A stretch of 60,162 nucleotides of DNA, counting the filler, from Platydemus manokwari (lineage: Eukaryota), in assembly GCA_037951405.1 (NCBI GenBank). It is 5 parts of 5 records of this genome, joined end to end, with 100 filler letters (N's around TTAATTAATTAA, not from the genome) between each part and the next. Parts side by side here need not be neighbours in the genome. Positions count along the whole stretch, not along the records: positions 35,200 to 49,127 come from JBBMOY011573632.1; 4 more parts are not named here. One strand, given 5' to 3'. The notes beneath the pieces were generated by a model, which saw nothing but the letters and a program-made list of their open reading frames with translations, ran no database searches and was not told the origin of the DNA. Of this stretch, positions 680 through 49,127 are shown piece by piece; the stretch's first letter is position 1, and every line of letters starts with the position of its first letter. Made by a program: the position numbers and the translations under genes.

Positions 680-800
680 CCAAACAATATAAACTCAAAA
701 AAAGAAAACCGGTAAAGATTTTCTTGGACGTAACAACATTTGTCAAGGAATTATAAATTTTATACAAAATTGTCAAAGTATTCTTGCAAACCTTGAGAGT
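680..800 (+). pseudogene. Very decayed LTR-retrotransposon integrase zinc-finger relic
   Basis: Frameshifted RFSWT...GIINFIQNCQS resembles the integrase HHCC region (YW..M..DI..FI..C..C); short and degenerate. Confidence 0.25.
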
Positions 801-4070: not shown

Positions 4071-7000
4071 TTATGTGTCTTAATCTGTTATGTTCAGAAA
4101 GTATTGCAAAGTCTTCAGAAAACTGTATCAAAAGAACATATATATTTAGATGAGATTTTTTAGTTTTTCCTGGTGTATAATAATAATGAAGAAGTAGAGG
4201 ATAAAGTTCCTCATCGCGTATTAAAACGGAGTGTACACTAGATAACTCAGAATTAGCAATTTTACCGAAAAGATCAGTCACATTTGGAATATTCTTAACT
4301 TGAATAATCTTCAAACTAATTTCGATTTAGTTAAAGCAATGATAGTTGAGAACATTATTGCTCTAGTGAAAGGAAATTCGTTATCTTAGATGACTATCTA
4401 CCGAAAATAAAAAAATGCAGTGTGATGATTATTGGAATTTATATTGGAGAAACAAATAAAATTCCAGGAATCCTGATTAATATCTATCCTGATTGAAAAA
4501 TATCGATCCACCCGGTCAGCAAAACAAATTTTAGAAAAAATAAACTTTTATGGTCATTCTAAATATTTATTTATCATTTAAAATTTTAAATTAAGTATTT
4601 TCAAGATCATGTTTCATGAAAACAGAGTCGTATAAATATTTTATGAATAAGAAATTTTCGACCAAGGAAAATTTAGCCATCATCGCAAAATTATATTCTC
4701 AGATTAGTTTCATGGTTAGGATTGTATCTTAGTCATTCGATATAAATATTCATTACAAATTGATTGTTACTAAGTTTATAAATTTATTCATGTCAACACA
4801 AACATATAGAATAAATAAATATAAACTTGAATTCATTATAAACTTCTATAAATATATATCATATTTTACAAATTTATTTAAATCATTATCATTCAAGTTT
4901 TTTTAATTCTGTCCTGATACATCTGATTAAAACAAAAAGAAATAAGTGATCCATTCGATGCAATTATCTGAGATATATTGAATCAAAATTAAAAATACCA
5001 GTAAGGTAACAAGAGCGAACGTCAGTGCACAATAATTTTCGTTTTCTTTTAAGTTGATATATTTTATCTCGTGTCAAAGAAGAAATGTTTCATGAATAAT
5101 TACTCCCAAGATTCATTAATTTGATGAGTCATCATAAATAATTTGATTTTTTTCTTATCATTTCAATGATAAAAATATTAGACAATAAATTTAGGAAGCC
5201 AGTCAAAGAAAAACCCCATTATGCATAGGAGACAGGACATGAACATGTGAACTGAAATGAACATGGTTAAGAAACACTGATGTACCATTGAAACAGACGA
5301 AGGAATAATAACTTAAGAAATGAGAATAAGAAATGTAGAAATTAAGAAAAGCAGAACGACGGAAACAGAAAAAGTAATTAGTGAAGAAATAAAATATTCC
5401 GACTTGAAAAGTATTTTCAAATGAAAATTCTGATAATAAACCACCGATATTAAACAATTCCAAGTTGGATAGAACAATACATGATTAAACACGATATTAC
5501 AGAATCAATTAACAAACAAACAGCCATAATTATCGGTGAAGATAATTTCTGTGACATATATATCTCTAAGATTCTTGTTTTGAAAATAAATATTTACTAT
5601 TTATTTGTTTACGTTTAATAATAATTCGATTAGTTCTTTGATAAAACGTGGATGATCAAATTTATTAGAGTTAAAAAAATTAAACTTTCGTGGATAAAAT
5701 TTTCAATTTTCGCAAATCATTATTAATATGAATTTCATCAGAAATCCGGACGTATGGAAATATTTCCCACATAGAATGTTTTTGTGAAATTTGAAAATTA
5801 TTTAATATATTTAAAATTAAACCAATTCAAGAGAAACCACGGGTCATTGAAATTTGAAAAATATTTCATTAAATTTAAATTATTTTTCGAATTCGTCGAA
5901 ACAATTCTTAATCTCAACATTCTTAGATAGTTTTGCCATCATCAATAGATTTTTATGATTAATCGGTAATTTTCTTGTCTCGGACATTCCTATCTATCTT
6001 TTGTTACAAATAATATTTTACAAAAATTAAAAAAATGCAAATAATATTTTTTAGAATAATTCTAAAAGAAAATCATTAATATTTTATTCGATTAAAATAA
6101 ATAAATATAACATTTGAGAACATTTTGCTTAAATGGATCACTTTAATAATGTGTGCAGAATGACTACGAAACAACCTCTGTTCCTGACAACAATTCTTGT
6201 GATTATCTTTCATCTTTTGAGTAATTACCCTTTATCTTACAGAGATTATTAGAAGTGGTTTTCGAGTTTATTTAATTATCCTTTATTGATCCATTCTTGA
6301 GTGTCATAAACGAAACATGTTGCATTTTTTAAATGACTTAACCAAGAATCTATGTAATGAGTAAGGAGTTTTTCTATCTCAATAAATAGAATTAACAAAG
6401 GAAGAGACTAAACAATATATTAACAAACGAAAAAATTCAGAAAATATTAAAAAAAATTATTAATAGAAATACGAATTTTCAATATCATTTATTGGATTTT
6501 TATAAAATACGAATTGGTGATTTTTAAAGTTTTATAATTTTAATTATTTTATCATAAAAGATTACAGTGTAATTAGACTGGATTTGTCGCATTAGTTACG
6601 TTAAATGTAAGAGAAATTAAAAGTTAATATTCAAATTTATTTAATGATTGTCGTAAAATCTGAATGATTGCAAAACGCTCAAAATTAACGTTTTGATTAT
6701 TCAAATAGAATAATAAAACATAAATATTTACATAAAAATAATCAATGAATACAATCAAAACATATTAAGTATTCAAGAACGAGTCGAACAATATTCAAAT
6801 AACGATTGAGTTCCAAAAATACTAAATCATTAATCGACACGTTTAAAATAATTTATTGTTAATCCAATGTATAATTTTTTAGGTTTTCTAATCAAGAATT
6901 ATGAAAATATAAAATGAATCGATTTTTAGCTAAATTTTTTTTATAAAAATGTAATTAAACCAATTTAATAATAGATAATCTCAAATATTATTAAAGGATA

Positions 7001-7176
7001 TTTTAAAATATTTAGAGTCAAGACTTTAGAAACAAGTGATACTATTTGGATTTAATGGATACTTTAGGAATTGTTAGGTGTGAGACCCCACCCAATACAA
7101 AAACAATAATTAGAACAAAAAAATTTTCAAGAAAAACCTAAAAATAGATCCGAAAACAAAAATAATAATAAAATGT

Positions 7177-7837
7177 TGTTAGGTGTCAAAGGGTTTAATT
7201 TGATTTTCTTTTTAGAAATGAGTGATGCCAGACTCCAGAAGGCAGTGTCAATAAATGATGTACATGATTTGAATTATAAATAAATAAACATATATATTTT
7301 TTCGAGAACAAACTGATAAATAAAATATAAAATTCAATGACAATAATCAATAATAATTAACTGATATTTTTTACTAAATATTACCCAACAAATAACCAGG
7401 AATTTTTCTTTATATTAATTAGAGTAATAAATCAACCGCTATTATTTTCTTAAAAGTTTATATAATCATTGAGAGGAGAGCGACAAGGTCCTTGATTTAT
7501 TATAGATAGTTGGGACACAATAGTCTGACAACTATAAAGATAATTTAATTTTTTTATTTCAATTTAAGAATTAATTAAAGTGCTTTTGAGCTGGGCCCAC
7601 GACACGATTATTAATAATAAAGTTTATAAAATAATTTTACTTGTTCGAAATAATTGAGCAGTTTCGCGTTTCTTTTGTTTTTGTTTTGTGGCGGTCCTTC
7701 ACTGCGTGCCGGTTATTTTATAGTAACTGTTTTATGATAATTAATGGCCTGAATTGTGTGCTAATAAATGGTCATGAATTGTTTTTTGTACCATTAATGA
7801 ATAGTTAGTTTATTTTAGTTTATTTCTGTACTAAACA
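7177..7837 (+). repeat. LTR-like repeat family A, copy 1
   Basis: Begins TGTTAGGTGTCAAAGGGTTTAA and is collinear over ~550 bp with the reverse complement of ~49500-50146 (gactccagaaggcagtgt, caacaaataaccagga, gcgtttcttttgttttt). Confidence 0.75.
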
Positions 7838-9431
7838 ATATTAAAATGGAAGGATGTAATAAAAAACCAAAAATAGCATCAGAAAATAATAAATTATAAA
7901 AATAGATCCTAATTTTAAACGAACACCTACAGAAAATTATACCTGAATTATTCTATGAGGAAAGAATCTTATTGAGTAGAAAATCGAATGATTGAAAAGG
8001 AATAAGTTTATAAAAACGATGAGAGTTAACTGGCTAATAAGTATTATTGTTATTTCGTCATCGATTCAAGTAATTTTGATTTGTTAAAATGGCTTTTATA
8101 ATAATCATTATATTAATGAATTTATATTACTTGATCCTAACTTTAAATGAATTGGACTCGTTCAGTCATTAAATTAATTAAACCTAAGGCTGTAGCGTAA
8201 ATATATCTCAGCAAGAAAGATTGCTGGTACATATAGGCCCAATTCTCGGTAAGTTTTTCAACAATAAGGAGACTTGCATGGAAAGCACAAGATAAACAAA
8301 TTTATTTCTATAGAAACAAAGGACCCTATATAAATCGTGCATTAAAAGCATGGTTATAGTTTTATCTAAATAATAATCATTCTATTCATATGTTCTGTTT
8401 AAATTTGTAATATTAATTTGTATATTAATATTATATTTTTAATTACATATTATTAAACAGTTTTCATTATTATCTTCGTAGTCAAATATCGTTTCTAATC
8501 TATACATTTGTTCGTATTATATTTATGAATTTACAATTATCTTATTCATAATATTTTAATAAATAAATCAAATCTACCAAAACCATTTATTTATAATTCA
8601 ATTCTTAAATGATTTTTCAGCAATGTTAAATGACTTGATAACCAAATTTAACGATTGAAACTATTTTTTCATGAATTGTTTTTCCATATAACTTAAAGAT
8701 TTGGTAAAGTGATCATCGCATATCAATAGAAATTCAGATATATTATGGTTGTAGAGCATTTAAACAATTTTTAATTAACGAATTAAATTTTGATCAAGCA
8801 GGATGTTTAAGATTTTCTATTATTACGATACATTTAACTTTAAATATTCCAATATTGACACAAAAATAAAAATCTCTTTTTGCTATTTTCTTGGGACACT
8901 CATGATATACGAATTTTACAAGAATCCAGAACAATGCACTAACTGTGAATTCTACCGATTTTTGGGAACACTTCAAGCTTATTGCATAGCATTATGGGTA
9001 TTATAAAACATCAACTATAAATTTAAATAAATTAATAATCAATAAATTAATTTTAATTAATATTTTCAATTGAATTCCACAAACTACTTTATGAAACTGC
9101 CCATCTATTCTCGAAATTTTTATTGATACTACTTAATAATACATTCTAAAGTTTATTAATATCAATTACAAGGATGATATACTCTCGAGAGGAAATTCTT
9201 AATATTAAAATACAAAATCAAAAAACAACTAATGACAAATTTTAAATTATTATCTATAAATTCAAATTATTAGACAAATAAATTTTCGTGCTGTTTCTTT
9301 AAATTATATTTTGAGAAGAACAATTAATCCGATTTAATGAAATTATAAATTAATTAAAACCACAGTGTTATGGATAATTTAATTCGAATTTCTTAAATAA
9401 CTCATTCAACCCGTTTAGTGTTTAAACGGGT

Positions 9432-9445
9432 ATAACCATGGTAAC
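9432..9445. promoter_or_regulatory. Candidate RFX X-box motif
   Basis: ATAACCATGGTAAC fits the RFX X-box consensus; a second half-site CATGGAAAC lies ~25 bp downstream; no target gene identified. Confidence 0.25.
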
Positions 9446-10055
9446 GTCAATTATAATATATAATGAAACATGGAAACGAATCATGGGCCCATAATCCAAT
9501 GTAGAAGTTTAAAAATCAAGTTTTATTGTAAAATTCACGATAAATACAAATAATAAAAGCAACTGATATTCGTTTTATAAATTAAGAACAATAGTTTGTT
9601 CCAGTTTATTTTCTGATTGGAAAAAAAACACATTTTGCAACCTCGTGAAAATCGAAAAAAAACTATCAATTGATTAGCTTAAATGAAAACACTTTCATTT
9701 GGTACACAACATCAATTTATTATATCGATTTCAATTTCCATTTCTGTAAAATAATGAAACCAGGAAGCAATTCGGTAAACATATAAAAACATAGAAACAA
9801 GTCAAAATCAATCAAAAATAAAAGCTTGATGTGTAAATGTTCATGTCATCCCAATAAACGATAAAAAATTTTCCAATAAAAGCCAAATACTTGTTTTGCC
9901 GGATCTTTGGGTGAATTCGATGTCATCGATTAATGAGTTGTGTAAAAATACTGACGAATGTAGGAAATAATTGGTTCCTTGCCAAACAATTAAAATATCA
10001 CTTAAAGAGATACAGAGGCTACATAAACATTTATTGATGCAAGTATGCAGTAGAT

Positions 10056-10155
10056 NNNNNNNNNNNNNNNNNNNNNNNNNNNNNNNNNNNNNNNNNNNNT
10101 TAATTAATTAANNNNNNNNNNNNNNNNNNNNNNNNNNNNNNNNNNNNNNNNNNNN
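10056..10155. other. Artificial contig linker
   Basis: N44-TTAATTAATTAA-N44, stops in all six frames; identical to the other three linkers. Confidence 0.95.
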
Positions 10156-11222
10156 GTAAATTATTAATTGTTTAAAAAGTTACAATTACGACATTGATTT
10201 TAATGACAAAATATTTTCGATTAGTCAAAGATATTGATTGAAAGATTATTAATTCTTATAGTTTTGTCAGAAAGATTAATGTTAGTATTATTTAAGAATT
10301 ATTAATTGTTATTGGGTTCGAACCTCACCATTGCTATTTTTATTTTTTATCACATCTCCTATTATTTCTCATTCAATATTTAACCCACTTTTTCGTTTTA
10401 TCTTTTATTATTTATCCTTTATTATTTTTCGCTGTTTAATTCATTTTTTTTTACTTTTCTAATTTGCTTTCAAATCCGAAAACAAATAACGACAAATGTT
10501 ATCAATTAATTGTAACACTGCTTGGGTCTTCAAAATAAAAAAGAAACAATAAAATATATAATAATAATGCCAAAATCAAAATAAAATTGTTCAGATGTCA
10601 CAATTACTTGAAAAAGAACACACGTTTTCGGTCTGAAATTGAGATTTATTAATTAGCGATGTTTTCTGATTCGATTAAAGAAGATTGAAATTAAAATTGA
10701 TTTGCGGGCCAGGGATTGTAATTGTTAATTAGAAATACGAGATGAAAATTAAGTGAAATTATATATTCGATGAGTTGGTTTCTGTTAAAACTCAACAGCG
10801 TGAGTTCGATCTTCTTTGTCTTACTTGGATTAATACAAAGATAATAAAGAATGATAAAATTGTGAATAAAAAAATATTCTTTTCAATGCGTTTATGGATT
10901 GAGTTTATTTTGGCGACTTGTGCTAATTTTTTTAATCTTATTTATGAAATTTAAAACCTACCGATATCATTTAGTATTTTTTTATTTCAATAGCTACAGG
11001 AACAAAGATTTTAGATCAAATCAAATTAATCTGTAAAAATAAGGTACACCCAAGATCGATAGTGTTTTCAATACTTCAGTTATAAAGAATAGAAAATTTT
11101 TAAAAATATCTTATCTGCTATTCCGATAGAGTGAAACCTATTGGTTGTGAATAAATTATTTTTTTTTTTCAAAAGTTATTGTTAAAAAATTAGCAAAAAA
11201 TTCAAAATTCGACTGACTAACT

Positions 11223-35199: not shown

Positions 35200-35257
<58 letters not shown>

Positions 35258-35265
35258 TAATAATA
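35200..35265. repeat. (AAT)n microsatellite at contig start
   Basis: Direct reading. Confidence 0.9.
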
Positions 35266-35433
35266 GTACTTATTAATTTTAGAAACAATAACTAACATTA
35301 ATAAAAATAAAAATTATAATTATCATCATTCCTATTATTTTATAATAATTTTCAGTTTTTTGATAAACTTTAGATGTTATAATATTGATTTCTGTTATGT
35401 TTTTCACCAATAATTTTGCCACCAATAATCTAG

Positions 35434-38400
35434 GTTTTCCATTGCAAATATTGGGTTGTACGTCATTGCAATCATTGGTTTTACCTTATCAAGCATTCGA
35501 TATTGTACCAGATGAGATTCAGAATTTAATCAATTTAAAAAAATTTGTGGTTGATGGTTGCATGAATTTACAAACATTGAGTAGCTATCTCGGAACACTG
35601 CCATTGGAGGGTGCTTTTTTTTAATGATTTTTTTCATATTATTTTCATCACAATCAATCGCTTCCAGTTCTCTCTTTGCAAAATTGTAATAATCTCAAAA
35701 CACCACCATACGAAATTCGTAAACAAGGTATGAGAATTACGATTGCTTATTTATTGCGACTGGTTAGTGGCAGTGAGGCTTGTTATAGAACTAAACTGAT
35801 GTTGGTTGGACTCGGTGGAGCTGGAAAAACCAGGTTGAATGATAAATATTCTTTAAGAATCTTTAGTCTCATTTATAGTCTCATGAGAGCACTCACCAGT
35901 AAGGATTTTCGAGCTCCTCATTTATCAGAGGAAGCGATCACTGACGGAATCGACATTAATACATGGTCTACAAAACAAGATGATGGCATAACATTACAGT
36001 TTTCGGTTTGGGATTTTGCCGGTCAAACACTGTATTATAACACTCATCAATTCTATTTGACTGGTCGATCGATTTATTTGTTGATCTGGAATCTTCGACA
36101 AGGATTCGAGCATGCGGGTCTTGATTTCTGTTTGAATAGTATTGGCTGCCATGCCCCGGCATCTCCAATTTTCATAGTAGGCACACATTCTGATAAGGTA
36201 TCTTATAGTTCCGAAAAAGTAATTTTAATGAGCTTTTGCAGGTGGAAAAGAGTGAAATTCCAACTTCTTTGTATAAATCCAGATATCCTGCGGTTGTTGG
36301 GTTTTTTTTCGTTAGTTCATTCAATGGCAAGGTATTATTGGCTTATTTATTTTATTCATCTATTATAAAAGTCTTGAATAAAGCTATTTGATAATATAAT
36401 TTATAACTAATGATTCAATTCAATTGTTCATTCACTTGTAAGTGATGGACAGGGCCTCAACTCCATGCCCACTGTACTCAATATATGTATTAATGACAAG
36501 CCGATAAGTCCTGAACAAATATTCGAATAATATTCCAGTTTTACATTAACCTATCTCTCACATACTTCCTATTTTCAAGCGCCAAAAATAAATTATAATA
36601 AATAAGTATTAACTTACATAACTATTAGCTTTTTTGAGGTTTTCGAGAGAATTATGACTTTTAAATTTGATAAAATACGTGTTGAGATAATTAACAAATG
36701 TGTATAATTATAAAAATAAACTCAATTATAAGTTATAAGTTAAATTTCCGTCTCCAAATGAAATAACGAATGCTGTTTAATAAGATATAATTACGGCTAT
36801 AACAAATAAAAATTAATGTATAGAATATCCACTTAAATATTGACATCAGGGATAAAAAATAAATCGTTAATTAACTAAAACAATAACCAGATACTCATAA
36901 TGCCTTGTTGTTGATTAACTTACTAAGGGTTGGGCCTGTATGTGCCGGCAATCCTTCTTAGTTATTATTGATTTCAAGATAAAATTTAATTCAGTTAATG
37001 CAATGCCAGGGCTGGATCCAATCAATTTGATATAAGAATGGCATTGTTATTCAAATTCATTATCATAAATATCATTTCAACAATTGTGAATTACTGAATA
37101 AAATAATAAAGATCAAAATATTTCTGGTTTTGACAAATTTTCTACGATTAATATTATTCTGTATTCATGGTTTCTTATAAATGATTTTCTATGAGACAGA
37201 ATATTTCTTGTTAATTGCTTAAGTTTCGCCACGTAATATCGATTATAATCGAATAAATTTGGGAACTTTCTTAATTTTATTTCTTGTGTGTTTTCAGTGA
37301 TTATTTTCGGAGGTGGTGTTGATAAGTAATAAGGTATGGAAACCGTAAATGGATTTCTTGTTGGAATTGTCGGTGATTTAATTAGTGAAATCATAATCCT
37401 TGAAATGTCACTGTTCAATAAATTCCAACTGGAAATATTCTATTCGTGGCAATTCGTTTTGTTTATTGTGCTATAATATTCAATAATCAATAGATATTGT
37501 TTCTAATATAAACCTAAACAATGATATTTAATTTAATACCACTGTTGTGAAACTTTGAGTATCGATTATTGACGATTTGGTGTAGTCAGAATTCATTGTG
37601 TTAATATATTTTCACATTAATATTAATTCGTACCCATCACAATAATTTAAAACATTGACTATGTCATTACAAACCATGGAAACTGGCCTTAATGTTATAA
37701 CAGGGCATGAAAGAACTACATGATCGCATCATTGAAGAAACGAAAAAGCAACCGTATATTGGTGAAATCATTCCAAATGCTTGGCTTCGATTGGAAAAAG
37801 ATCTTATCAGGTTAGCTCAATCAATTGTTTGTCATTGATATTTCGTAATATTATCTCCAATTAAGCCAGAGAAACACAGCAGATTATTTAAATTGGGAAG
37901 CCGTCGTAAAACTAGCATCCAACAATGCAATATACGGTTCGGAAGTGAGACGTTCTCTTGATGCACAGATCTTTTGTTATATTTTATCATTTAGATCAAT
38001 AAAGTTGTACGATTCCTACACGATCTGGGAAATATCCAATATTTCGAATTCCCATTACTGAAGGATTTCGTAATTATCAATTCCCAATGGTTGGTTGATG
38101 TGATGGCTTGTGTTGTCAGCGTGAAAAATTCAGTAATCGAGGTAGATTTTCTTCAAATGTTTACCATTCCATTAATCCTGATGTGTCCGTGTAGAACGGA
38201 AAACTATATCATTCCAAAATCAAACTTGTCTGGCCGAAATATCCTGAAACAATCCATTCTTGGCTTTTACGTTTGACTGAAATATTTGATTTAACTTTTC
38301 AAGTACCTGGACAGGATTTCAATTTTATTCCTTGCCTTCTGCCAAATGAGCCACCAGAATTCCAATGGCCTGATTTCGTTGATTTTACACAAATAAGAGA

Positions 38401-41400
38401 ATCGAATATGTTCTATCAATTTGAATATTTGCCTCCTGGTTTATTTAATCGAGCTCAGGTTAATAGATCGTTTTATTGAAATTATATTTCGTTTTATCAC
38501 TATCCAGGTGAGATTATCTCAATTTTCCGATAACTTCATTATTTGGCAACATGGATCTTTACTCAATAAAGATGGCGACAAAGCATTGATGACAAAGCTC
38601 AAGTATAAATCGTTCATTTATTAAAGTGTACTTCTATCTAATTTTGTTCAAAGCGATCGAACCGTCAAAATCTGTGCCAGAGGCTATTGGCCCGATAATA
38701 TATTATTCATCATTCATGAGATGTTCGAAACTCTGATATCAGAAGCTTTCAGTGGGGTTAAATATGAGTATCAAATTTCTTGTAAAAAGTGTGTGTCGGA
38801 GGTTAGTAATTATTATTATTAGTGTTATTATTAGTATTATATTNNNNNNNNNNNNNNNNNNNNNNNNNNNNNNNNNNNNNNNNNNNNNNNNNNNNNNNNN
38901 NNNNNNNNNNNNNNNNNNNNNNNNNNNNNNNNNNNNNNNNNNNNNNNNNNNNNNNNNNNNNNNNNNNNNNNNNNAGTTTTCCTTCTTGAAGTATCTATTT
39001 TGTAATTCTTTCCACTCATCAGTATTGTATTGCAATTCAAGCTCACTATTTTTAAACTTGCTCAATACTGGATTTTCAAAATGTATCTCTTGTGAGTGCA
39101 TTTCAGTCCCATATCAGCACATATTCTATTATTAATCTGATTATTATAGCCATTATTATATTAAATATTAAAGAAATTATCTTTATTATTATAATTATTA
39201 TTTTATTACCCCTTAGAGAGACAGCGATCCCTATTTATTCAATAAAAGTGTCCTTCAAAGAGCAATTCAGTCAAAAACCGTATTTATTCAATGTCATCGC
39301 AATTTTCACATCACTACTATGACCGAGATACAAGGTGATCTCATTTATATTTTTCATATATTATTATTACTTCGAACTACCTAACATTTCTATAATTATA
39401 AATAAAAATTTTAAAAATACTTGTTATCTAAGCGAAAATTTCCAAAAAGTACGAGGAGCATGCAGATTCTTAATTTTTAACAATGCGTTGGATGCGGTTG
39501 TCAAATTCTGCAATGGAGAGTATTTTCTTCTTTCAAATATTGATAGATATTATAACAGTATTATCTACGATGATTGGATAGTACTATTATCATCGGAATT
39601 TATTATTATTAATCACTTATTGATCGGCTTTGTATTTTATAGAAAGCACTCCTCCTGACGCGATAGAAGATTATGATTTACAATTCAAAAAATCCGTAAA
39701 CCTGTTATCGTCGAATTTGCGACCTGATATTTATCCAATCATGATATTGGTTTCGGATATGGATTATCATGATGATTCTTTATTATTGAATACGCCTAAG
39801 CGAATTATAACTGATTTATCCAATCAATATTCTGTGTTCGCTTTTCATTGTATTTAGAATTATATGTTTTAACAATAAAATATTCTTTCAGATGGTGTGA
39901 TCCATTGATAGAAGGCACTCCCGAAGATCAGTACATAGAAATATTGACCCGTGCTGAGGTGAGAGATTAATAACACACATAATAAATCAACTAATAAGAC
40001 ATTTTATATTCAATCACATAACCCGGATTGGATTTTCTCAGCAGTTATTATTGATTTAAACTAGAACTGTGAATATATCATTTTCAAGTTTTGAAAACAG
40101 TTTTTATGATTTTAGTTAAGATTTGGCTTATTTGCATTCATAAATATTTATAAATTTCACCAAGATTTAAATATGAATTTCAAATTGTTTATTCGAAACC
40201 TACCGATAATTATTCAGTTTATCAATTTTCCAATAGATTATCTGAACTTACTTGATAATTGGAAATCAATCTACTAATGTAATTGAATATTTTAATATTC
40301 ACTTATTCTCTAAATAAATTTATTAGGGTGATTTTAAAATACATTTATTAATAATATTAATGTGATTCTTTGATTAATAGTTAGAAAGATGCAAAAATTT
40401 TTTTGATAAAGTGATAATTTCGTGCATCTTATTAGATAATGTAGACAGAACAGAACTAAATCATATCGATAAAAGCAATCCTTTTTATTTGGAGATCATG
40501 AATCCAAAAGATCTTTATTAGAATTATTTTTATTCAACTAATTTTTTCAATAAAATCTCTGGATTGATTTTAGAGTATCAAGGTAAAATTAGATTACCGA
40601 TCGGAGAAAATACAAGGTCAAAATATTTGTAAATCTAGGAAAATGATATTGATTCAGTTGTCTTAAAGTTTCATGAGATTGTTGTGTATCGAATGATATT
40701 TATGTAGGTTTGTATGTGAGGGAATGATTTGATGTTTCATTCACAAAATTTTCAAATTTAATACATTGGAAATAAATATTTTAACCTTTTTAGTTATTGA
40801 TGGAATTCAAAAATACCAATAATGACCTTAATATAATAAGAACAAATCTAAAAATCAGTAATGTATGAATAGATTCAAACAACAATCTGACCCTTAGCAG
40901 ATTAATAGGTTACGTGTTGTAAATATTATTTTAATATCGACATGAATAGAACATATCCACAGTAAAGGTTTATTGATTGATATAGCATTAGATAATAAAA
41001 ATGAACAATTGTGAGATGTATTTATATTTGTGAAGCTTTCCCGTTGGAACTAATAGCATCCGACTCTGGTAAAAAACAAAATCATGGAAGAAGTGTAGCT
41101 TAGAAGTGTAGTCTAAACATTGATTAATTTCTAGCTGGGATTATTGCCCTAATAACCACGAAAATAAATGTACTCATTGTGATCTGAAGATAAAGGTCGA
41201 GCTTGTAATTTTATTCGTGTTGCAGATAAATCCCAGTGACAACGCTGGTGTTATTTTAAATTGATTTTTGCTGAATGAAATCGCGTTGCTTGAAAACAAT
41301 TTGTTGTGAAAGTTTAAAATTTCTTACTGAAAACTGTACTTGATTGAAAAATTTTGTGCCAATTTCCGACTTTTAGCTCAATGTTGACACTCATTCTGTG

Positions 41401-42254
41401 CTCATTTCATTTGTTATTTGAGTATTTTATTGTTTAAATGTGCTTCATTGTCTTGGAAAAGTGTAATGTTCCCATAGCAATCCAAAACGATAATTGATAA
41501 ACATATTTTTTATTTAATATCATTTTACAGTTTTTATCTATTATTATTCATTCAAATTATTTATTATCCAATACTTATCGTTCAAGTCTGTTATTACATC
41601 GTGGTTTTGATTCTCTATTTCTATGTTAATTTTATATTTTCTATGAGTTTTGAACCATTTTGTTTACGTTGAATTTGTGTTACTGCATCATTCTAACATT
41701 TAAGCGGGCTCTATTATTATTATTATTATTATTATTATTATCATTATTGTTATTGTTGTTATTATTATTACTATAATTATAATCAAAATTATACTGATAC
41801 AATTTAATTTTAATATTAATCTTTCAAACAATAAATTCTAATTGTTATCATTTTTTCATTTCTATTTTAAATCTCTCTCCTGATATCTATGATAATATCA
41901 ATATGGTAATATTTATATGAATTTATTAAGAGTATGTATTGATAGATTATAATCAGCTTCATTTCTGGCAACTTCGCCAACAATAAGCTCGGAATGGCCT
42001 TGTTTCGATTAGCTAAAGTAACATTGAGAAAGAATATGATTCTGGTGCGACTCGATAAAGGATATACCGAAAAGAATCTGGGTCTTGAAACAGCAGGAGA
42101 TGTTATTATATTCATCATTGATGCTTAAATTATTCAAAATATCGATTATTTAATTTAGAAATACATCAATTTTGAACGGACTGAACTTTACGATCAAAAA
42201 TTTGGAGATTTGTTACACGATTTGAAAAATCAACTCGAAGAAAGAACCATTCAG
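35434..42254 (+). CDS. Roco-family protein LRR-Roc-COR-(Cys/His)-TIR-like; 5'-truncated, 3' end uncertain. Exons 35434-35610, 35668-35833, 35879-36197, 36242-36331, 37704-37810, 37866-37944, 37995-38141, 38195-38458, 38508-38602, 38654-38801, 39217-39334, 39643-39835, 39892-39958, 41946-42101, 42159-42254
   Basis: Fifteen phase-compatible GT-AG exons give one ~740-aa frame. LRRs (VPDEIQNLINLKKF, LSLQNCNNLKTPP); Roc KLMLVGLGGAGKTS, TDGIDI, WDFAGQ, VGTHSD, VSS; COR FLHDLG..., WLVDVM, IPCLLP, YLPPGLFNR; CKKC...CHRNFH; TIR-like C-terminus. A possible last exon is 42326-42388. Confidence 0.9.
38844..38974. other. Assembly gap (N run without linker)
   Basis: Ns inside a Roco intron; exon order is continuous across it. 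Confidence 0.95.
38975..39100 (-). pseudogene. Second Chapaev-like transposase fragment, in a Roco intron
   Basis: LQYNTDEW plus frameshifted IDTSRR resembles Y...EWRLFIDSSKR and the 22780-22835 relic. Confidence 0.4.
41713..41772. repeat. (TAT)n imperfect microsatellite
   Basis: Direct reading. Confidence 0.85.
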
Positions 42255-43599
42255 GTCATTTTATTTTATAACTGAATCAATCTTTCTTTAATCATTGTAA
42301 TATTATTTTATATTATCATTTTTAGAATACCGGAAATTATATGTTTCGGTTTATAATTATCGATTTTCTCATTTTTATATTTGGATAAGGATGCGAAGTT
42401 AAAGAAAGTTTAATTAAAACAATTTTATCTACTTATTACAATAAGTAGTCAAATTAAATAAAATTATAATTTTATAGACATTACTCGAATGGGAACGAAT
42501 CAAATTAATATTTTACAACCAAAACATTTCCTTGTTTACCTTTTCTTTTATATAAGATTTTATAATTATTAATTCAATTTTCTTCTTGGTGGTGGTTTAT
42601 TGTGGGAGATTGTTTTTAAAAGATTTCGACCACTTGATCATTGTTTTTCGAATTCATTCATTCATTCTTAATCGAAAATGTCCATGAAAAAAACTGGTTT
42701 CGGACTTTCATAAAATTATCAGAACAAAACTGCCATAGTACTCATCACCGACCGTAGATAATCAATATTTTAGTTTAGTATTTTCTTTATGGCCATGTCG
42801 TTGGTCTGTGGTTGCCAAATTCCGAGAACTCCTGCAATAAAAGTGAGCAGTTCCGCAGTCTAGTCGGGCCGTTTTTTTTATCGCGTTTCGGAGGTTTTAG
42901 TATTCTTCTATATTTGTTGAGCTGTTTCGGCCATTTATCCGTTGAAGATCCACTCTTAGTTGGGATTCCGTTAATTGACATTCTATCTCTACAAAGACTC
43001 TGTAATCCGTATTGTTAACAATTTCCTTGGTCCGTGAGTTATGAATAAATCCAAATTCAGTAATAGTTAGGTGGCCACTAAAAATATTTTTGACCACATT
43101 GGATTTTGAAACTTATTGATTAATTTATTTATTTCTATAATATAATGTTTTAATTTTATTTTTTAATTTTATTTGAAATTTTTATTTTTTAAATTTTGAT
43201 TGAATTAAATAATATTTTCATTAATTTTCAATCAAAATATTTTTATTGGTTCAAAAATTTAATTTATTTGAAAATTTAGTTTCGATTTTAAATTGTATTT
43301 GTAATAATTATTTGAAAAATAAATTTTTTAATCTCTTTATTTATTTGTAAAATATTTTCACTAAATTTACTTTTTAAATTTCTTCAAACGATTTCATAAT
43401 TATTTAATTAATAATTATTTTAGATTGGATAAAAAATATTAATTAAAATCGATTTTATTCATTAAATCTAATTAAAACAATGATTCTTTTTGTCATGTTT
43501 GGAATCTTTTCTGTATGTTCAAATAGTTCTTGTATAATTATGTTACATTCGGGCTTTATTGATTTTATTGTATAAATAAGCTTAATGTTATTTGATTCC

Positions 43600-44620
43600 A
43601 CTACTGTATTAATCAGTCTCTATGAGCTCTTGATTAAGACCACTGATGTAATCTACCTAAGGTGATATTCCTTCACCTCGCACAGCATTATTGTTTGAAG
43701 ACAATAAGTGTGGCAGTAGAGATACGTTTAATTAACTTAACTATCAGTCTCAAATTTTATAAAACCTATTTCAACTTTTAGCAATGTTAATGTCAATGAA
43801 AATGAATAACAATTTTACAACTCCTATATGAATGATAACTCAAATTCGCTATTATAAATATTTATTAACAATTAACATCAATACAGAAACTGGATAACAA
43901 TAATAAAATAAAAATTACAAATAACTTTTAAAACTACACCATGTACCAATACTTATAATAGGCCAATTTCCAGATACAAAGACGGTTTATATCTCCAACT
44001 CTAGGAGTAGAACCAATTTACTCTTAATAGGAGATAAAACAATACGATATATAATATAGATCAATATTTTACAAGAAGAGATCTTAAGTTAGGGACATCC
44101 AGTAAAATACTAAGCATATATGGAATATTGTATTCTTCTGCAACTGCGATCTTCTATTTTGTACTAGATTCTCTTGTAAAATTAATGTGTCTTCGAATAA
44201 CTGTAACAGTGAAATTTTGTCATCGAGAATTGTGGCATTGAAAATAATGGCAGAGTTAATTGTGACTGCTACCTTATATAGGCAGTATGAATCACTCGCA
44301 GAATATTCTCGGCGATTAAATCTAATACTAGTGAATTTATTATTTTATCAATAGAATTTATTCACTGGTGAGAGAAATTCTCTCGGAATATATTTATTAG
44401 GCAGAGAAAATATCGCTCGATTAAATTTAATCGAGTGATAATTTTATTCTGTGATAGAATTTACACGCGCGAAAATAGATGACAATTTATTTGTCGCTGT
44501 TATTGCCAGATATCTTATTGTGCATTGATATTTTATAAATTAATTTATTATTTTAGCGGATTTCGACGTATTTGCTCTTGGTGGTTTCGTTGATATTAGC
44601 ATTTTACACACACATACACA
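43600..44620 (+). repeat. Dispersed repeat family B, copy 3
   Basis: Collinear blocks shared with 1090-1900 and 21080-22250. Confidence 0.6.
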
Positions 44621-46741
44621 AAATAATTATTATAAATTTCAATATTTCAAACTTGTTTTTGCTCAAAAATTCCAAGAGTTGTTAAAATACAAAAATACAT
44701 GCCAATTAAGTAAAAATTGATACAAATAAAAATTAATGCATATTTTATACGTACTGTCATGCAAATGTATACATATATTTTTTCGAATGTGAATTAATTG
44801 TTGTGGATAAATTGTTGGGCCAGAACCTCAACAAATATTAAAATATATTTTCAAGAAAAAAGATTAAAATTTGAATTTTTATTTTAATAATTGCCATTTT
44901 ACGTGTGTTGCTTTCATTTTTTGTAATTTCTTTTGAAATTTGTGATCTTTTTTGTAGTTTTTTATCCTCAACTTTCAACTGTTAAATTTAAAAGATAATC
45001 GATTTAAATTATAGATTCTCCCAGTATAAATAGAATGAAATCATTTTCCTTCTCCTCTCTTACGATAAAATGGAGAGTTTTAGCTCTGATCGCACAGAAA
45101 TATGAATTGAATTATAAATAATTTTCAACTATTCAGTATAAAATTATATTTTCAATAATTTTATAAAATCGATTTATATTATTCTAGCATTGGAGAATTT
45201 TGATGAATTTTTTAAATATGATTTTATATTTTATTTTTATAATTTAATATTTTATTTAATTATATTTATTTCAAATTTTTATATTTAATAATATTTTTAT
45301 CAAATTATATAATTATCATGTAGCTCTGTCACATATCTAAAATATTTAGCTTTTCTCTTATTTTTGATGTTACAATCCAAATGCATTGTTGAGTATTTTG
45401 CTAATTATTTGCTAATTATTTTTTCCTCAAAATCCTCAAATATATCCCCCCATTCGTATTCTAAAGAATTGAATTTTTGTACAAAAAATAATTCCATTTA
45501 TTTATACCGATTGCAAATCATGCCAATATGATAAATGGAAATGCTTTGCTTATGAATACTTTTTTTTTACTTTTGACTTGTATTTGATAATTTTTTCCTT
45601 AAAAACGAGATTTTAATTAGTTGAAAGTAAGGTCATTTCGTTGGCCGATTATTAGTTTATGGAATCCCGGTGATTCCTCGTGCCATTATAAAATTTTATT
45701 AATTTTTTTTAGATATCATTTAAATATTATTTTCTACCGGACAAGACTTTCGTTCCAATTCTCTCTCTTTCATATATATACTCGTTTAAAATTGATAAAT
45801 TGTGTGATCAGGTCAATAAATCGAATTTTAAAATGTAGTTATTTTTGTTTAGTCATTTGCTGATCTATTTTTGGAAATTTATAGATCGTATGAATTATCG
45901 ATTAATCGACAATTACAAGTACCGATATGCCTAATATGTGAATTTGAACGATAAATTATTAACGTATATTAAACAATTGATTATCAATAAAAGAGAGAGA
46001 ATACAAATGCACACCTAATAATGTGATTCCACGAAAATGTATCTCAGAATAAATGTTAAAATAAATCTTTATCATTCGAATATAAGACTACGAAAACTGA
46101 GAATTGTGTTCAATATTCATTTGAAATCTGCTTTACATGATAAATTGTTATTGGTACTGCATGTATGTTACAGTTGTTATTGTATTAGCCACTGGGATAT
46201 CATTCGTTTAATATAAATTTGCGAAAAGATCAGATAAATAATAATTATAATTTTAATTATCTTCATTTTTCATCAACATATTGAAAGAGAAATAAGCTTG
46301 AATTTATGTATGGTTCTGGAATAATAAGACTAATTCTGGATTTCACATGAAAACTTGCTTGCAAATAATAATATTAAGATAAAGCAGAAGAAAACATGGA
46401 GTCCTTGTAGTAATAATTATTATCACTAGTTTTTATTTTATTTTTTTTAATCTAAATGTGTACCAAAATAATTATCAGTATCAGTTACATATTATTTATC
46501 TTCAGATAAACATTTGTAAATAAATTTGTTGATTCGATTCATTAAATTTTTGGATAAGCAAATTTCATCAATTAGTATTTCCTTTCGAAATTTATTTGCT
46601 AACAAATCATATTTTGATTTTCGCTTATTTTTTTAGAATTTTAAAATCTCCAACAACCAATCGCAATCGATTGTTGTCTTATAAAAATCATATATTGAAT
46701 GCAGTCTTTCTAGTTTTTGTCGAGGAAAAAAATTATCGAAA

Positions 46742-47020
46742 ATGACTTTCATTCTTGGTTTTCTGTTAATATTGCTCGCAATTGATTACGGATCAACGGA
46801 TCTCGAAACGGTAGGGTGAAAAAATATTACCATTATTCAGTGGAAAATTTGGTTTTGTTTTAAAATATTCTTATTCTTCTTTCAGTACTTCTTTCCTCAG
46901 AAAAGGAATGACAGGCCCAGTGTGATCTTTGAAGGTCAGAGGCCCATCAAACGAATATACGGTCGAAGAGGGAACATTATCCCATGCCAATTTAATGCAA
47001 TAACTTGCTTTGGAAAATAA
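46742..47020 (+). CDS. Allatostatin-C/somatostatin-family neuropeptide precursor (67 aa); exons 46742-46810, 46886-47020
   Basis: MTFILGFLLILLAIDYGSTDLET|YFFPQKRNDRPSVIFEGQRPIKRIYGRRGNIIPCQFNAITCFGK*: hydrophobic signal peptide, phase-0 75-nt GT-AG intron with a pyrimidine tract, KR/KR/RR sites, C-x6-C-F core, Gly-Lys amidation signal before the stop. Confidence 0.88.
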
Positions 47021-49127
47021 AAATATCAATTAATTTATTAATGAAAGAACAAATATATTTTATTCGGTTATTCTTTGCATTTCACTCAGAAAAATCTCCT
47101 TAATAAATCAATATTTTAATAGTGAACTATATATATGTAGACATATTATTGATTTTTTTCAGTGATATTGTTCGATTAGAGTCGTGATATTGTCGATAAT
47201 TTTATTGATTTTTCATTTAAAAAAATATTTATTCAACATTTTATGGTGGTCCTATTCAAAAGTTTTCGATCTGATTCTCGTTTTTTTCTTGTTTTTCGTT
47301 TGGAAAAGATTTGTTTGAATAGATTGATAATGATTATCTCTTTTATTTTCTTGTTATTATTGGTTGTTCAATCTGTTTATCACGTTAAATTCAAAATAAT
47401 TGATCTTGGCAAAGATAATTACTCGATAGTTAGCTGTGTTTAAATTAACTATTCTATCGATTTTGTGTTTTATTTAAAAAAATAATTTTGAAAGAAGCGC
47501 CACATGCTTTGGAATGATTTTTAAAGGAGAATTGATTTGGATTCGTTCTGTGATTAGTTAATTTCGATGACATCATATTATACAATTCCAAAAATGATGT
47601 TGTTACCGCGCTATCATTTTATATGCGTGTGTGTGTTTGAATAAATAAAAGAATAAATATAATTTTATGTTGTAGGAAACGATAAAAATAACAATTAAAT
47701 TAAGAGTATTACTTATTCTGCACTCTGTATTTTTAGATTTAATTTTAACCAGTATTGAAATTTTCTAGCCAATCTACATAGCACTTGATATGAATGATTG
47801 GATGGAAAGAATTAGCAAATTGCTTAATTACTAGGGCTTGTGATTTCAATTATCAAGCGCGTCAAACCAAAAATTTTAGAAATCATAAAACCTAAACATT
47901 TTTGTTTAAATATCGAATATAAAGTTGACAATAAAATATTATCTATCAATTCTTATTCCATTAATAAATTTTTATTGTTTTCATAATTATATTTACTGCC
48001 GAACTTGACTAATATAATAATCTTAATGAAAAAATAATTTAAAACTAGTTAACTGATATGAAATAGATGGTATTACAACTGGTAAAACAAAATTACTTTT
48101 TGAAATATTGGTGGATTTATAAGGTGATCTAGTTGGACTTCGATCATTAATTTATTATCGATTATTTGAACCTTTGTTAAATTCAGGAAGTTAGAAATCG
48201 ATAATTTATTATTCCACAAAGGATCTGTTAGCTAACAGATCAATAGATGTTTTTACTAAGTCAAATAAAATAATAAATATATTCAGAATATTACAAATTA
48301 GCAAATATTCGAAACTAAATTTTAAAGGTTAATTAGTTTTGTGACTTCCAAACAATGACAATTGAATGGGGGGAATTAAGTGACACTCAACTTCGATATG
48401 AAACTAAGGATTTGATTCTGAATATTTTATTTATGTTCGTGTAAATTTGGTTATTAAGAATCAATTATATATTTATATAGAGAGAGAATTACATTTGATT
48501 TTATGAGTTCTTTATTCGTCCACTCAAAAAATGAAAAATTAAATACGAAATATTTATTGATATTGAATTATTGTGATGGTCTTGATTATCGCTTCTTTTT
48601 AATTTTGATTTTTCTCTCGAATCCTTTTCGGTTAGGTGAATTACCCATTCCAGTGTTGTTGCTTTAGCCAAATTCGATTAAAGTCTAACACTTTCGCATA
48701 TCTCCATTTATATCTATTAATTTAAAATTATTTATTAAGAAATAAAATTTTGACATCACAATTGGTTTTTTATCCAATCAGAATCCGAGGTGCGTGAATA
48801 ATAAACCCAGTAATTACAAGATAAAATCGTTGATCTCCATATCCATTGTTTATAAAAGTTTCTTGTAAGTCTTTCATCCATCTTATAAATCAACATGTCA
48901 CTGTCAACCATTCAATGTCCATTGTCAAACGAGAAAATTGAGACTCTTATACCAGAAATTATAGAGTGCAGTGTAAGCACAATTAAAGTTTACCATAAAT
49001 TACAGAAAAATGTGCATCAAATTAAATTATAGAGTCAAATCAGTGCTGAAAAATATTGGGTCTATAACTTAATAACCGGAATTTGACACCAGATGTAAAC
49101 ACTTGTGTGTGTGCTGTAGCAAATCAT

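What the first reader, a model, noticed from the sequence alone, without database searches (positions are those of the whole stretch)
46742..47020. Hidden neuropeptide gene: compact allatostatin-C/somatostatin-type precursor with a divergent amidated peptide
Missed by the ORF track because both exons are under 60 codons. Seen: signal-peptide-like N-terminus, one clean intron, and RR-GNIIPCQFNAITCF-GK-stop (peptide at 46970-47011). Established: AstC-family peptides are C-terminal, disulfide-cyclised C-x6-C-F peptides (insect AstC ...CYFNPISCF; arthropod AstCC/AstCCC ...C(Y/A)FNAVSCF, AstCCC typically amidated) acting on somatostatin-receptor-like GPCRs. Here the ring CQFNAITC with Pro before the first Cys is a sequence I do not recognise. 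The FNA core looks more ecdysozoan than the mollusc/annelid CLVN-type peptides. It implies an unannotated ligand-receptor system in this animal.
Basis: partly seen in the sequence, partly recalled or inferred. Interest (0 to 1): 0.85.

Follow-up and report, generated by a model that had tools for sequence, protein, structure and literature searches.

The report
Unannotated allatostatin-C-type neuropeptide gene
A small two-exon gene in an AT-rich invertebrate genome very probably encodes a secreted precursor of a ring-closed, amidated allatostatin-C-type neuropeptide; the hormone family is well known, the peptide sequence is new, and transcription could not be tested.

Summary
Exon 1 (46742-46810) plus exon 2 (46886-47020), joined over a 75-nt GT..AG phase-0 intron, give a 67-aa precursor. 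It has a hydrophobic N-terminus, three dibasic sites, and ends RR-GNIIPCQFNAITCF-GK-stop.

The C-terminal motif is far beyond chance: about 9e-11 expected in the piece and 8e-5 over the whole scan. A degenerate DNA pattern for it found ten loci in 241 million metagenome records, and all ten were genuine arthropod allatostatin-CCC genes.

A profile of those exons aligns to exon 2 end to end (hhalign E 1e-7). The match has the same 14-residue peptide length and the same Gly-Lys-stop. Pairwise BLASTP to bee and other "prohormone-1" (AstCCC) precursors gives E 7e-7 to 6e-9, collinear into the proregion.

The mature peptide differs at 8 of 14 positions from the near-invariant arthropod SYWKQCAFNAVSCFamide. 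It was not found in the papers or protein collections searched.

Amidated AstC-type peptides have already been reported outside arthropods, in Priapulus and in the rotifer Adineta. This is therefore a new member of a known kind.

Not shown: transcription and splicing (the only run holding the locus is DNA), signal-peptide cleavage, the receptor, and the animal's phylum.

The parts
46680..46687 (+). TATA-like box (TATAAAAA), 62 nt upstream of the ATG; CAGTC initiator-like motif at 46702-46706
   Evidence: Read directly in the sequence. Function as a promoter is inferred, not tested.
46742..46810 (+). Coding exon 1: MTFILGFLLILLAIDYGSTDLET. It carries a signal-peptide-like h-region, FILGFLLILLAI, followed by a short polar stretch.
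   Evidence: Mean Kyte-Doolittle hydropathy of residues 3-14 is 3.29. It is the only spliceable signal-peptide-like exon within 500 nt upstream of exon 2. SignalP was not available.
46811..46885 (+). Intron: 75 nt, GT..AG, phase 0, with an in-frame TGA. It has a polypyrimidine tract and a tttcag acceptor.
   Evidence: The DNA contig of run X1 retains it, as expected for genomic DNA. Splicing itself is not confirmed by RNA.
46886..47020 (+). Coding exon 2 including the stop codon. It holds the proregion with dibasic sites KR (46901-46906), KR (46949-46954) and RR (46964-46969), then the peptide, Gly-Lys and TAA.
   Evidence: hhalign against the AstCCC profile gives E 1.1e-7. BLASTP to AstCCC precursors gives E 6e-9 to 7e-7.
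46896..46900 (+). Possible alternative acceptor (cctcag ending at 46900). It is also in frame and would drop YFFPQ from the proregion.
   Evidence: Read in the sequence. It is 15 nt downstream of the main acceptor. Untested.
46970..47011 (+). Predicted mature peptide GNIIPCQFNAITCF: 14 residues with a Cys6-Cys13 ring of six residues.
   Evidence: It has the same length and register as arthropod SYWKQCAFNAVSCF. The calculated monoisotopic mass, amidated and oxidised, is 1536.7217.
47012..47020 (+). Gly (amide donor), Lys (removed by carboxypeptidase) and the TAA stop.
   Evidence: 86 of the 120 listed AstCCC precursors end in the same CF-GK; the others end in G, GKK, GKRK or GRK.
47102..47107 (+). 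AATAAA polyadenylation-signal-like hexamer, 82 nt after the stop.
   Evidence: Function inferred.

Best explanation
This is a real, unannotated two-coding-exon gene for an allatostatin-C-family neuropeptide precursor of the amidated 'AstCCC / prohormone-1' style.

The proposed mechanism is inferred from established prohormone processing; none of it is shown here.

1. The 67-aa prepropeptide enters the secretory pathway through its N-terminal hydrophobic signal sequence.
2. Prohormone convertases cut at KR(29-30), KR(45-46) and RR(50-51).
3. Carboxypeptidase removes the terminal Lys.
4. The Gly is used by peptidylglycine alpha-amidating monooxygenase to amidate the terminal Phe.
5. The two cysteines form a six-residue disulfide ring.
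6. The product is cyclic GNIIPCQFNAITCF-NH2.

By homology, this peptide would act on a somatostatin/AstC-type rhodopsin-gamma GPCR as an inhibitory neurohormone.

What is shown: the gene anatomy, the non-random motif, and significant similarity to AstCCC precursors.
For: (1) The anatomy is complete and self-contained. It runs TATA-like box, ATG in an A-rich context, hydrophobic N-terminus, GT..AG phase-0 intron, dibasic sites, C-terminal peptide, GK-stop and AATAAA.

(2) The motif is beyond chance. The matching DNA pattern found only true AstCCC genes in 241 million metagenome records, 10 of 10.

(3) hhalign of nine AstCCC last exons against exon 2 gives Prob 94% and E 1.1e-7. KRSYWKQCAFNAVSCFGK aligns with RRGNIIPCQFNAITCFGK without gaps up to the C-terminus.

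(4) Pairwise BLASTP of the 67-aa product against AstCCC precursors:
- Apis prohormone-1: E 7e-7, 35% identity over 62 aa.
- P0165: E 6e-8.
- P0082: E 6e-9.
All three alignments are collinear through the proregion (DYGS--TDLETYFF against DDGSIETALINYLF).

[quoted passage not shown] In insects, one exon codes for the signal peptide plus a few residues and the last coding exon carries the peptide (PMC6585902).

(6) Language-model neighbours of exon 2 are an 87-aa arthropod cluster. After that come Prohormone-1-like, calcitonin, somatostatin and urotensin precursor clusters (a lead only).

(7) In the second haplotype seen in run X1, all three coding differences fall in the spacer (R42T, Y48F, R50Q). 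None falls in the signal sequence or in the peptide-GK.
Against: - There is no RNA evidence. The only public run holding the locus is DNA and retains the intron.
- No orthologue with the same peptide was found. The word-indexed search of 5.8 billion proteins gave no candidate.
- phmmer over 1.84 billion representatives gave only spurious repeat proteins. Family members were too short to reach database-wide significance.
- There is no Pfam match.
- The donor site (GTAGGG) is weak.
- The signal peptide has no charged n-region and no clean -3/-1 cleavage site by eye. SignalP was not run.
- The precursor is shorter than the listed full-length AstCCC precursors (67 aa against roughly 80-115).
- The proregion similarity on its own is weak: shuffle P = 0.04, and the HMM gave no hit.
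- One haplotype changes the RR site to QR.
- No receptor could be looked for.
Confidence: 0.8

Rival explanations
1. The locus derives from an AstC-family gene but is a decaying or silent copy (pseudogene or relic). It is no longer expressed or processed into an active peptide.
For: - There is no RNA support.
- The precursor is truncated relative to arthropod AstCCC and lacks most of the conserved DDGS-ETAL-NYLFAKQ proregion.
- Five differences cluster within 105 nt in the other haplotype. Three are non-synonymous, and one removes the first Arg of the RR site.
- The peptide differs at 8 of 14 positions from an otherwise near-invariant sequence.
Against: - The ORF, both cysteines, the F-N core, the Gly-Lys-stop, the splice sites, the TATA-like box and the AATAAA are all intact.
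- Neither haplotype has a change in the peptide or the signal sequence.
- The QR variant keeps Arg at P1 and Arg at P6, which fits monobasic cleavage as seen in other spiralian precursors (PMC8557429).
- Non-arthropod AstCCC-type peptides are just as divergent: Priapulus CQVNPISCFG and Adineta CFFNTVTCFG.
Confidence: 0.09
2. The gene is real but the exon structure differs from the reader's model. Either the acceptor at 46900 is used, or there is a further 5' exon or a different signal-peptide exon. The mature peptide would be the same but the prepro-sequence would differ.
For: - A second in-frame acceptor (cctcag) lies 15 nt downstream.
- Insect AstCCC genes have an untranslated first exon, and some have alternative acceptors (PMC6585902).
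- The GTAGGG donor is weak.
Against: Exon 1 is the only ATG-initiated, signal-peptide-like ORF within 500 nt that can splice in phase 0 to exon 2. The tttcag acceptor at 46885 follows the better polypyrimidine tract.
Confidence: 0.07
3. Chance open reading frames in AT-rich non-coding DNA: not a gene at all.
For: Both exons are short. AT-rich DNA readily encodes F/I/L-rich 'signal peptides': 2-6% of control sites give one. No database-wide significant homologue exists.
Against: - The expected number of the full motif is 9e-11 in the piece and about 8e-5 in the whole scan.
- The pattern scan of the metagenome collection produced no random hit at all.
- Pairwise E-values to AstCCC precursors are 1e-7 to 6e-9.
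Confidence: 0.02
4. A different cysteine-loop amidated peptide (CCAP-type, somatostatin/urotensin-related SSRP-like, or a toxin derived from one), not an AstC-type peptide.
For: There is superficial likeness to CCAP (P-F-C-N-A-F-T-G-C-NH2, recalled from memory) in the N-A-x-T stretch and in amidation. Somatostatin and urotensin clusters appear among weak language-model neighbours.
Against: - The ring has six residues, and Phe-Asn sits at ring positions 2-3 with Phe after the second Cys. This is exactly the AstC layout.
- CCAP has a five-residue ring, Asn directly after Cys, and an amidated terminal Cys.
- SSRP-like peptides carry a WK motif and a four-residue loop (PMC9048919), and neither is present.
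- The profile and BLAST matches are to AstCCC.
Confidence: 0.02

Closest known systems
Arthropod allatostatin-CCC (NCBI name 'prohormone-1'), peptide SYWKQCAFNAVSCF-NH2
   Same: - A 14-residue peptide at the very C-terminus of the precursor.
- A dibasic site five residues before the first Cys.
- A C-x-F-N-A-[VI]-[ST]-C-F ring.
- A Gly-Lys-stop ending.
- A small precursor with the signal peptide on one exon and the peptide on the last exon.
- BLASTP similarity collinear over about 60 residues.
   Different: - 8 of 14 peptide residues differ (GNIIP for SYWKQ, Gln for Ala, Ile for Val, Thr for Ser). In contrast, 118 of the 120 listed arthropod precursors carry the identical peptide.
- The precursor is 67 aa against roughly 80-115 for the full-length ones.
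- The DDGS-ETAL-NYLFAKQ proregion is only faintly recognisable.
- The intron lies just before the Tyr that aligns with the Tyr codon split by the phase-2 intron of cladoceran-type genes. It does not lie at the arthropod phase-0 site.
- No AstC/AstCC paralogue lies within the 14-kb piece.
AstCCC-type precursors reported in non-arthropods: Adineta ricciae (bdelloid rotifer) ...KRRMLCFFNTVTCFG and Priapulus caudatus ...KRDYFRKCQVNPISCFGG..., ...RCLLNPITCFGR... (bioRxiv 10.1101/2024.07.20.604414)
   Same: All have a six-residue ring ending C-F-G, which implies amidation, and a peptide that diverges from the arthropod consensus. Thr before the second Cys is shared with Adineta. Gln after the first Cys is shared with Priapulus.
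   Different: Similarity is confined to the ring: 7 of 10 identities to Adineta and 6 of the 9 ring residues to Priapulus AstCCC_2. The N-terminal extension and the proregion are unrelated by eye. The Priapulus precursors continue after the Gly.
Arthropod AstC (e.g. QVRYRQCYFNPISCF) and AstCC (e.g. GQAKGRVYWRCYFNAVTCF)
   Same: The same C-x-F-N-x-[IV]-[ST]-C-F ring. AstCC shares 7 of 9 ring residues, including N-A-x-T-C-F (Figure S5 of the preprint).
   Different: AstC and AstCC are not amidated: they end CF, CFRK or CF-stop. They have an aromatic residue after the first Cys, and AstC has Pro where this peptide has Ala.
Lophotrochozoan AstC (Aplysia SHYSSMCMFNVVACY; functional receptor known)
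   Same: A single C-terminal copy, a six-residue ring with F-N, and a precursor of about 100 aa or fewer. Per Koch et al., spiralian genes have only the phase-0 intron (PMC8786951; PMC9048919).
   Different: These peptides are not amidated and end in Tyr. They have an aliphatic residue after the first Cys and V/L/I instead of Ala after the Asn (PMC8851493).

Membership tests
Allatostatin-C family (AstC/AstCC/AstCCC) | Two cysteines separated by exactly six residues (disulfide ring) | tested here: met
   C57-QFNAIT-C64. The ring size is stated as always six in protostomes (PMC9048919). Disulfide formation itself is inferred.
Allatostatin-C family (AstC/AstCC/AstCCC) | Conserved ring residues: Phe-Asn at ring positions 2-3, an aliphatic residue then Ser/Thr before the second Cys, and an aromatic residue after it | tested here: met
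   CQFNAITCF compared with CYFNPISCF, CYFNAVTCF and CAFNAVSCF. hhalign E 1.1e-7.
Allatostatin-C family (AstC/AstCC/AstCCC) | A single peptide copy at the C-terminal end of a small precursor, preceded by a basic cleavage site | tested here: met
   RR at residues 50-51, peptide at 52-65, then GK-stop. The single-copy feature is described in PMC8786951.
Allatostatin-C family (AstC/AstCC/AstCCC) | N-terminal signal peptide | tested here: inconclusive
   A 12-residue uncharged hydrophobic core is present (mean hydropathy 3.29). No charged n-region or clear cleavage site is visible, and no signal-peptide predictor was available.
Allatostatin-C family (AstC/AstCC/AstCCC) | [quoted passage not shown] | tested here: met
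   The GT..AG intron at 46811-46885 falls between codons 23 and 24. The feature is taken from PMC9048919. The intron is predicted from sequence and not confirmed by RNA.
Allatostatin-C family (AstC/AstCC/AstCCC) | Ligand of a somatostatin/AstC-type GPCR | not testable with these tools
   Only a 14-kb piece of the genome is available, and no receptor gene lies in it.
Allatostatin-C family (AstC/AstCC/AstCCC) | Expressed and spliced mRNA | not testable with these tools
   The single run holding the locus is DNA contigs with the intron retained.
AstCCC subtype ('prohormone-1') | C-terminal Gly amidation signal followed by basic residue(s) and the stop | tested here: met
   CF-GK-stop. This is identical to 86 of the 120 listed AstCCC precursors.
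AstCCC subtype ('prohormone-1') | Ala after Phe-Asn (F-N-A), as in arthropod AstCC/AstCCC | tested here: met
   F59-N60-A61. The criterion is from PMC8851493.
AstCCC subtype ('prohormone-1') | Near-invariant mature peptide SYWKQCAFNAVSCF | tested here: not met
   8 of 14 residues differ. 118 of the 120 listed family members have the invariant peptide.
AstCCC subtype ('prohormone-1') | Conserved proregion motif DDGS[IV]ETAL[IL]NYLFAKQ | tested here: inconclusive
   BLASTP and MAFFT align DYGS--TDLETYFFPQK to it. The proregion alone gives shuffle P = 0.04 and no HMM hit.
AstCCC subtype ('prohormone-1') | Genomic neighbourhood with AstCC/AstC paralogues (the arthropod local triplication) | tested here: inconclusive
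   No second C-x6-C-[FYW] AstC-like ORF exists in 35200-49127. The piece is too short to exclude a neighbour.
Somatostatin-related (SSRP-like / urotensin II-like) peptides | WK (or FWK) motif inside the cysteine loop; four-residue loop in protostome members | tested here: not met
   There is no Trp or Lys in the ring, and the loop has six residues. The criteria are from PMC9048919.
CCAP-type peptides | F-C-N start, five-residue ring, amidated C-terminal Cys | tested here: not met
   The sequence shows P-C-Q-F-N, a six-residue ring and Phe after the second Cys. The CCAP consensus is recalled from memory.

The most novel reading that the evidence does not exclude
The animal may not be an arthropod.

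- Its neighbouring ROCO gene is closest, among named proteins, to gastropod ROCO proteins.
- Its introns are 45-55 nt.
- Its peptide is far from the invariant arthropod sequence.

Yet the precursor is collinear with arthropod AstCCC/'prohormone-1' into the proregion, and it ends in the same 14-residue, Gly-Lys-terminated amidated peptide.

That would mean the AstCCC-type precursor is not a product of an arthropod-specific local triplication. It would instead be an older protostome form, here in a lineage where no AstC-type gene has been annotated.
Probability: 0.35. Interest if true: 0.5.

Novelty: new member of a known kind. Interest (0 to 1): 0.33.

Why it matters
Short neuropeptide genes are routinely missed by annotation. 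This one adds an AstC-family ligand to an AT-rich invertebrate genome and gives a concrete peptide to synthesise: cyclic GNIIPCQFNAITCF-NH2, 1536.72 Da. It also gives a splice junction to test.

The arthropod AstCCC peptide is nearly invariant, so a precursor that keeps the architecture but changes 8 of 14 residues is informative. It shows which positions the receptor needs: the ring C-x-F-N-A-[IV]-[ST]-C-F-NH2. It also bears on how old the amidated subtype is.

This does not reveal a new kind of signalling system.

Tried and rejected
- **Word-indexed homologue search with the full 67-aa product:** no candidate.
- **phmmer of exon 2 over 1.84 billion representatives:** six hits, all long repetitive proteins. 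BLASTP showed no real similarity.
- **Pfam on both exons:** nothing.
- **Rfam and tRNA scans of the piece:** nothing.
- **Full-text searches for the peptide and sub-strings:** no relevant paper.
- **RNA evidence:** the only holder, X1, is genomic DNA.
- **Synteny:** contigs carrying relatives of the neighbouring ROCO gene (L011-L015) have no AstC-like ORF.
- **Proregion homology:** an HMM of arthropod proregions gave no hit. The shuffle test gave only P = 0.04, so I do not rest the case on it.
- **Identifying the organism:**
  - Named ROCO hits are gastropods at 52-53% identity.
  - Cluster look-ups gave no accessions.
  - Atlas look-alikes of the Roc exon mixed bacteria, algae, molluscs and rotifers.
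  - Atlas look-alikes of a COR exon were noise.
  - The phylum therefore stays unresolved.
- **One broad literature search:** badly targeted and gave nothing.
- **Pfam on ten intergenic ORFs:** nothing.
- **Considered and rejected:** CCAP-type, SSRP-type and chance ORF (see rivals).

Full report
**What is there**

The piece 35200-49127 is 27% G+C. On the + strand, an ATG at 46742 is the first possible start after an in-frame TAA at 46682. It opens a 23-codon ORF, MTFILGFLLILLAIDYGSTDLET, which runs into GTAGGGTGA.

Seventy-five bases later a pyrimidine-rich tract ends in tttcag (46885). The next 44 codons read YFFPQKRNDRPSVIFEGQRPIKRIYGRRGNIIPCQFNAITCFGK, followed by TAA.

The intron is phase 0 and contains an in-frame stop. 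The exon-2 frame is open back to 46820 but has no Met, so the peptide can only be made from a spliced message.

TATAAA lies at 46680, a CAGTC at 46702 and AATAAA at 47102. A second in-frame acceptor (cctcag) ends at 46900.

**Is it more than chance?**

I used the amino-acid frequencies of the piece's own six-frame translation.

| Motif | Expected in the piece | Expected in 250,000 windows |
|---|---|---|
| CxFNxxxC[FY]-G-[KR]-stop | 2e-6 | about 2 |
| Same, plus an upstream dibasic pair and the family-typical Ala, Ile/Val and Ser/Thr in the ring | 9e-11 | 8e-5 |

There is also an empirical control. I scanned 241 million metagenome records with a degenerate DNA pattern for C-x-F-N-A-[IVM]-[ST..]-C-F-G-[KR..]. 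It returned ten loci, and every one is a genuine arthropod allatostatin-CCC last exon...KR-SYWKQCAFNAVSCF-GK-stop. The pattern therefore does not occur at random at any appreciable rate.

The upstream exon adds less. A spliceable, ATG-initiated, signal-peptide-like exon in phase 0 within 500 nt arises in 2% of Markov-1 sequences. It arises at 6% of real AG sites in the piece. In the real sequence it is the only such candidate.

**Family assignment**

A profile of nine of these AstCCC exons (A1) aligns to exon 2 with hhalign probability 94% and E 1.1e-7. KRSYWKQCAFNAVSCFGK pairs with RRGNIIPCQFNAITCFGK without gaps and flush with both C-termini. The dibasic site, the 14-residue peptide length, the ring and the Gly-Lys end are all in register.

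A profile search seeded with this precursor plus the arthropod exons returned 165 proteins. Every named one is an arthropod 'prohormone-1', 'allatostatin C-like' or 'Allatostatin-CCC'.

Pairwise BLASTP of the 67-aa product against three of them gave the following.

| Subject | E-value | Note |
|---|---|---|
| Apis prohormone-1 (P0156) | 7e-7 | 35% identity over 62 residues |
| P0165 | 6e-8 | 37% identity over 63 residues |
| P0082 | 6e-9 | 33% identity over 66 residues |

The alignments run collinearly from the end of the hydrophobic N-terminus through the proregion: DYGS--TDLETYFF against DDGSIETALINYLF. Taken alone, the proregion similarity is weak. The shuffle test gives P = 0.04 and an HMM of arthropod proregions gives nothing. 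I treat it as suggestive only.

Language-model neighbours of exon 2 are an 87-aa arthropod cluster, followed by Prohormone-1-like, calcitonin, somatostatin and urotensin precursor clusters. This is a lead, not evidence.

Database-wide searches with the short query alone found nothing significant. That is expected for a 14-residue conserved core.

**Gene structure**

Koch et al. [quoted passage not shown] Spiralian AstC genes have only that one, and ecdysozoan genes have an extra phase-2 intron (PMC9048919).

I verified this on the fetched loci.

- L010 is nearly identical to Daphnia pulex AstCCC. L010 and L007 each have a signal-peptide exon, a phase-0 intron, an exon ending ...ETALLN-TA, and a phase-2 intron splitting the Tyr codon of NYLFAKQ.
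- L001, L002 and L009 have only the phase-0 intron, just before L-x-x-DDGS.

The gene here has one phase-0 intron, which fits the family-wide feature. If the BLAST alignment of the proregion is right, however, the intron sits immediately before the Tyr that aligns with the split Tyr of the cladoceran-type genes. It would then not sit at the arthropod phase-0 site. I cannot decide which intron it corresponds to.

**How it differs**

Arthropod AstCCC is almost invariant. 118 of the 120 listed precursors carry SYWKQCAFNAVSCF, and the other two differ only in the first two residues (NFWKQ, NYWKQ).

This peptide differs at 8 of 14 positions: GNIIP for SYWKQ, Gln for Ala, Ile for Val, and Thr for Ser. 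The precursor is also shorter, at 67 aa.

F-N-A is typical of arthropod AstCC/CCC, whereas lophotrochozoan AstC has V/L/I at that place (PMC8851493). Aplysia AstC is SHYSSMCMFNVVACY, not amidated (PMC8786951).

Amidated AstC-type peptides are not confined to arthropods. The NP-HMMer preprint lists Priapulus caudatus ...KRDYFRKCQVNPISCFGG... and ...RCLLNPITCFGR.... It also lists the bdelloid rotifer Adineta ricciae ...KRRMLCFFNTVTCFG. It lists none for Brachionus, Rotaria or Didymodactylos (10.1101/2024.07.20.604414).

The present ring shares Gln with Priapulus and Thr with Adineta. The exact peptide and its sub-strings occur in no paper searched.

**Population hint**

The only public run holding the locus (X1) is genomic DNA. 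One contig covers 46518-49075 with the intron in place.

It differs from the window at five positions, all within 46861-46965. Two are in the intron and three are non-synonymous changes in the spacer (R42T, Y48F, R50Q). None is in the signal sequence or in the peptide-GK.

The numbers are too small for a test, but the pattern is what a prohormone shows: a free spacer and a fixed peptide. R50Q turns RR into QR. Arg stays at P1 with Arg at P6, a context seen for monobasic cleavage in other spiralian precursors (PMC8557429).

**Which animal?**

This is unresolved.

- The upstream neighbour (about 35367-39967, + strand) is an LRR-Roc-COR (ROCO) gene (Pfam Roc 2e-16). Its introns are 45-55 nt.
- Its best named relatives are gastropod ROCO proteins at 52-53% identity, from Aplysia and Biomphalaria. 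The better unnamed hits (63%) come from environmental assemblies.
- This, and the distance from the invariant arthropod peptide, argue mildly against an arthropod.
- The F-N-A core and the proregion likeness argue for closeness to the arthropod CCC type.

**Mechanism (inferred from standard prohormone processing)**

1. The signal sequence is removed.
2. Convertases cut at KR29-30, KR45-46 and RR50-51.
3. Carboxypeptidase removes Lys67.
4. Gly66 is used to amidate the terminal Phe.
5. The Cys57-Cys64 disulfide forms.

The product is cyclic GNIIPCQFNAITCF-NH2, monoisotopic mass 1536.7217. By homology it would act on an AstC/somatostatin-type GPCR. Other fragments (STDLETYFFPQ, NDRPSVIFEGQRPI, IY-amide) are probably spacers.

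**Verdict**

The gene is very probably real (0.8) and belongs to the AstC family, of the amidated CCC style.

It is a new member of a known kind, not a new system. Transcription, processing, the receptor and the host phylum remain open.

Noticed in passing
window 35367-39967 (+): A multi-exon LRR-Roc-COR (ROCO) gene with very short introns (45-55 nt). The Roc exon matches Pfam Roc at 2e-16. The best named relatives are gastropod 'pats1-like' ROCO proteins at 52-53% identity. An N run (38844-38974) interrupts it and was left untouched.
   Followed up: partly
window 44500-44810, 45585-45894 and 48995-49127: High-copy repeats. In the DNA run X1, the summed contig depth reaches about 5,000-11,000, about 4,500 and about 430,000 at these three places. 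The single-copy background is about 13. Many contigs join these places to each other, as dispersed repeats or satellites would.
   Followed up: no
window 46861-46965: All five differences between the window and the 2,558-nt X1 contig cluster within 105 nt (intron plus spacer of the neuropeptide gene). The other roughly 2,450 nt are identical. This is a local pocket of heterozygosity or a gene-conversion tract.
   Followed up: partly
window 42779-43112: A patch of higher G+C (0.35-0.43 against 0.27) with 70-80-codon open frames on both strands. There is no Pfam, Rfam or tRNA match, and its nature is unknown.
   Followed up: partly
window 35200-35258: A (TAA)n microsatellite at the left edge of the piece.
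   Followed up: no
L010 (JACCDP010978519.1) and L007 (JACCDP011408267.1): These 'metagenome' contigs carry complete three-exon AstCCC genes. The spliced L010 product is nearly identical to Daphnia pulex AstCCC as printed in the NP-HMMer supplement. These records are therefore cladoceran DNA within a metagenome assembly.
   Followed up: partly
L012 (ENA GROS21-1 scaffold_5057), 472-5099: An environmental eukaryote contig (32% G+C) carries a ROCO relative whose COR exon also shows a faint TIR_2 hit. This would be an LRR-Roc-COR-TIR architecture.
   Followed up: no
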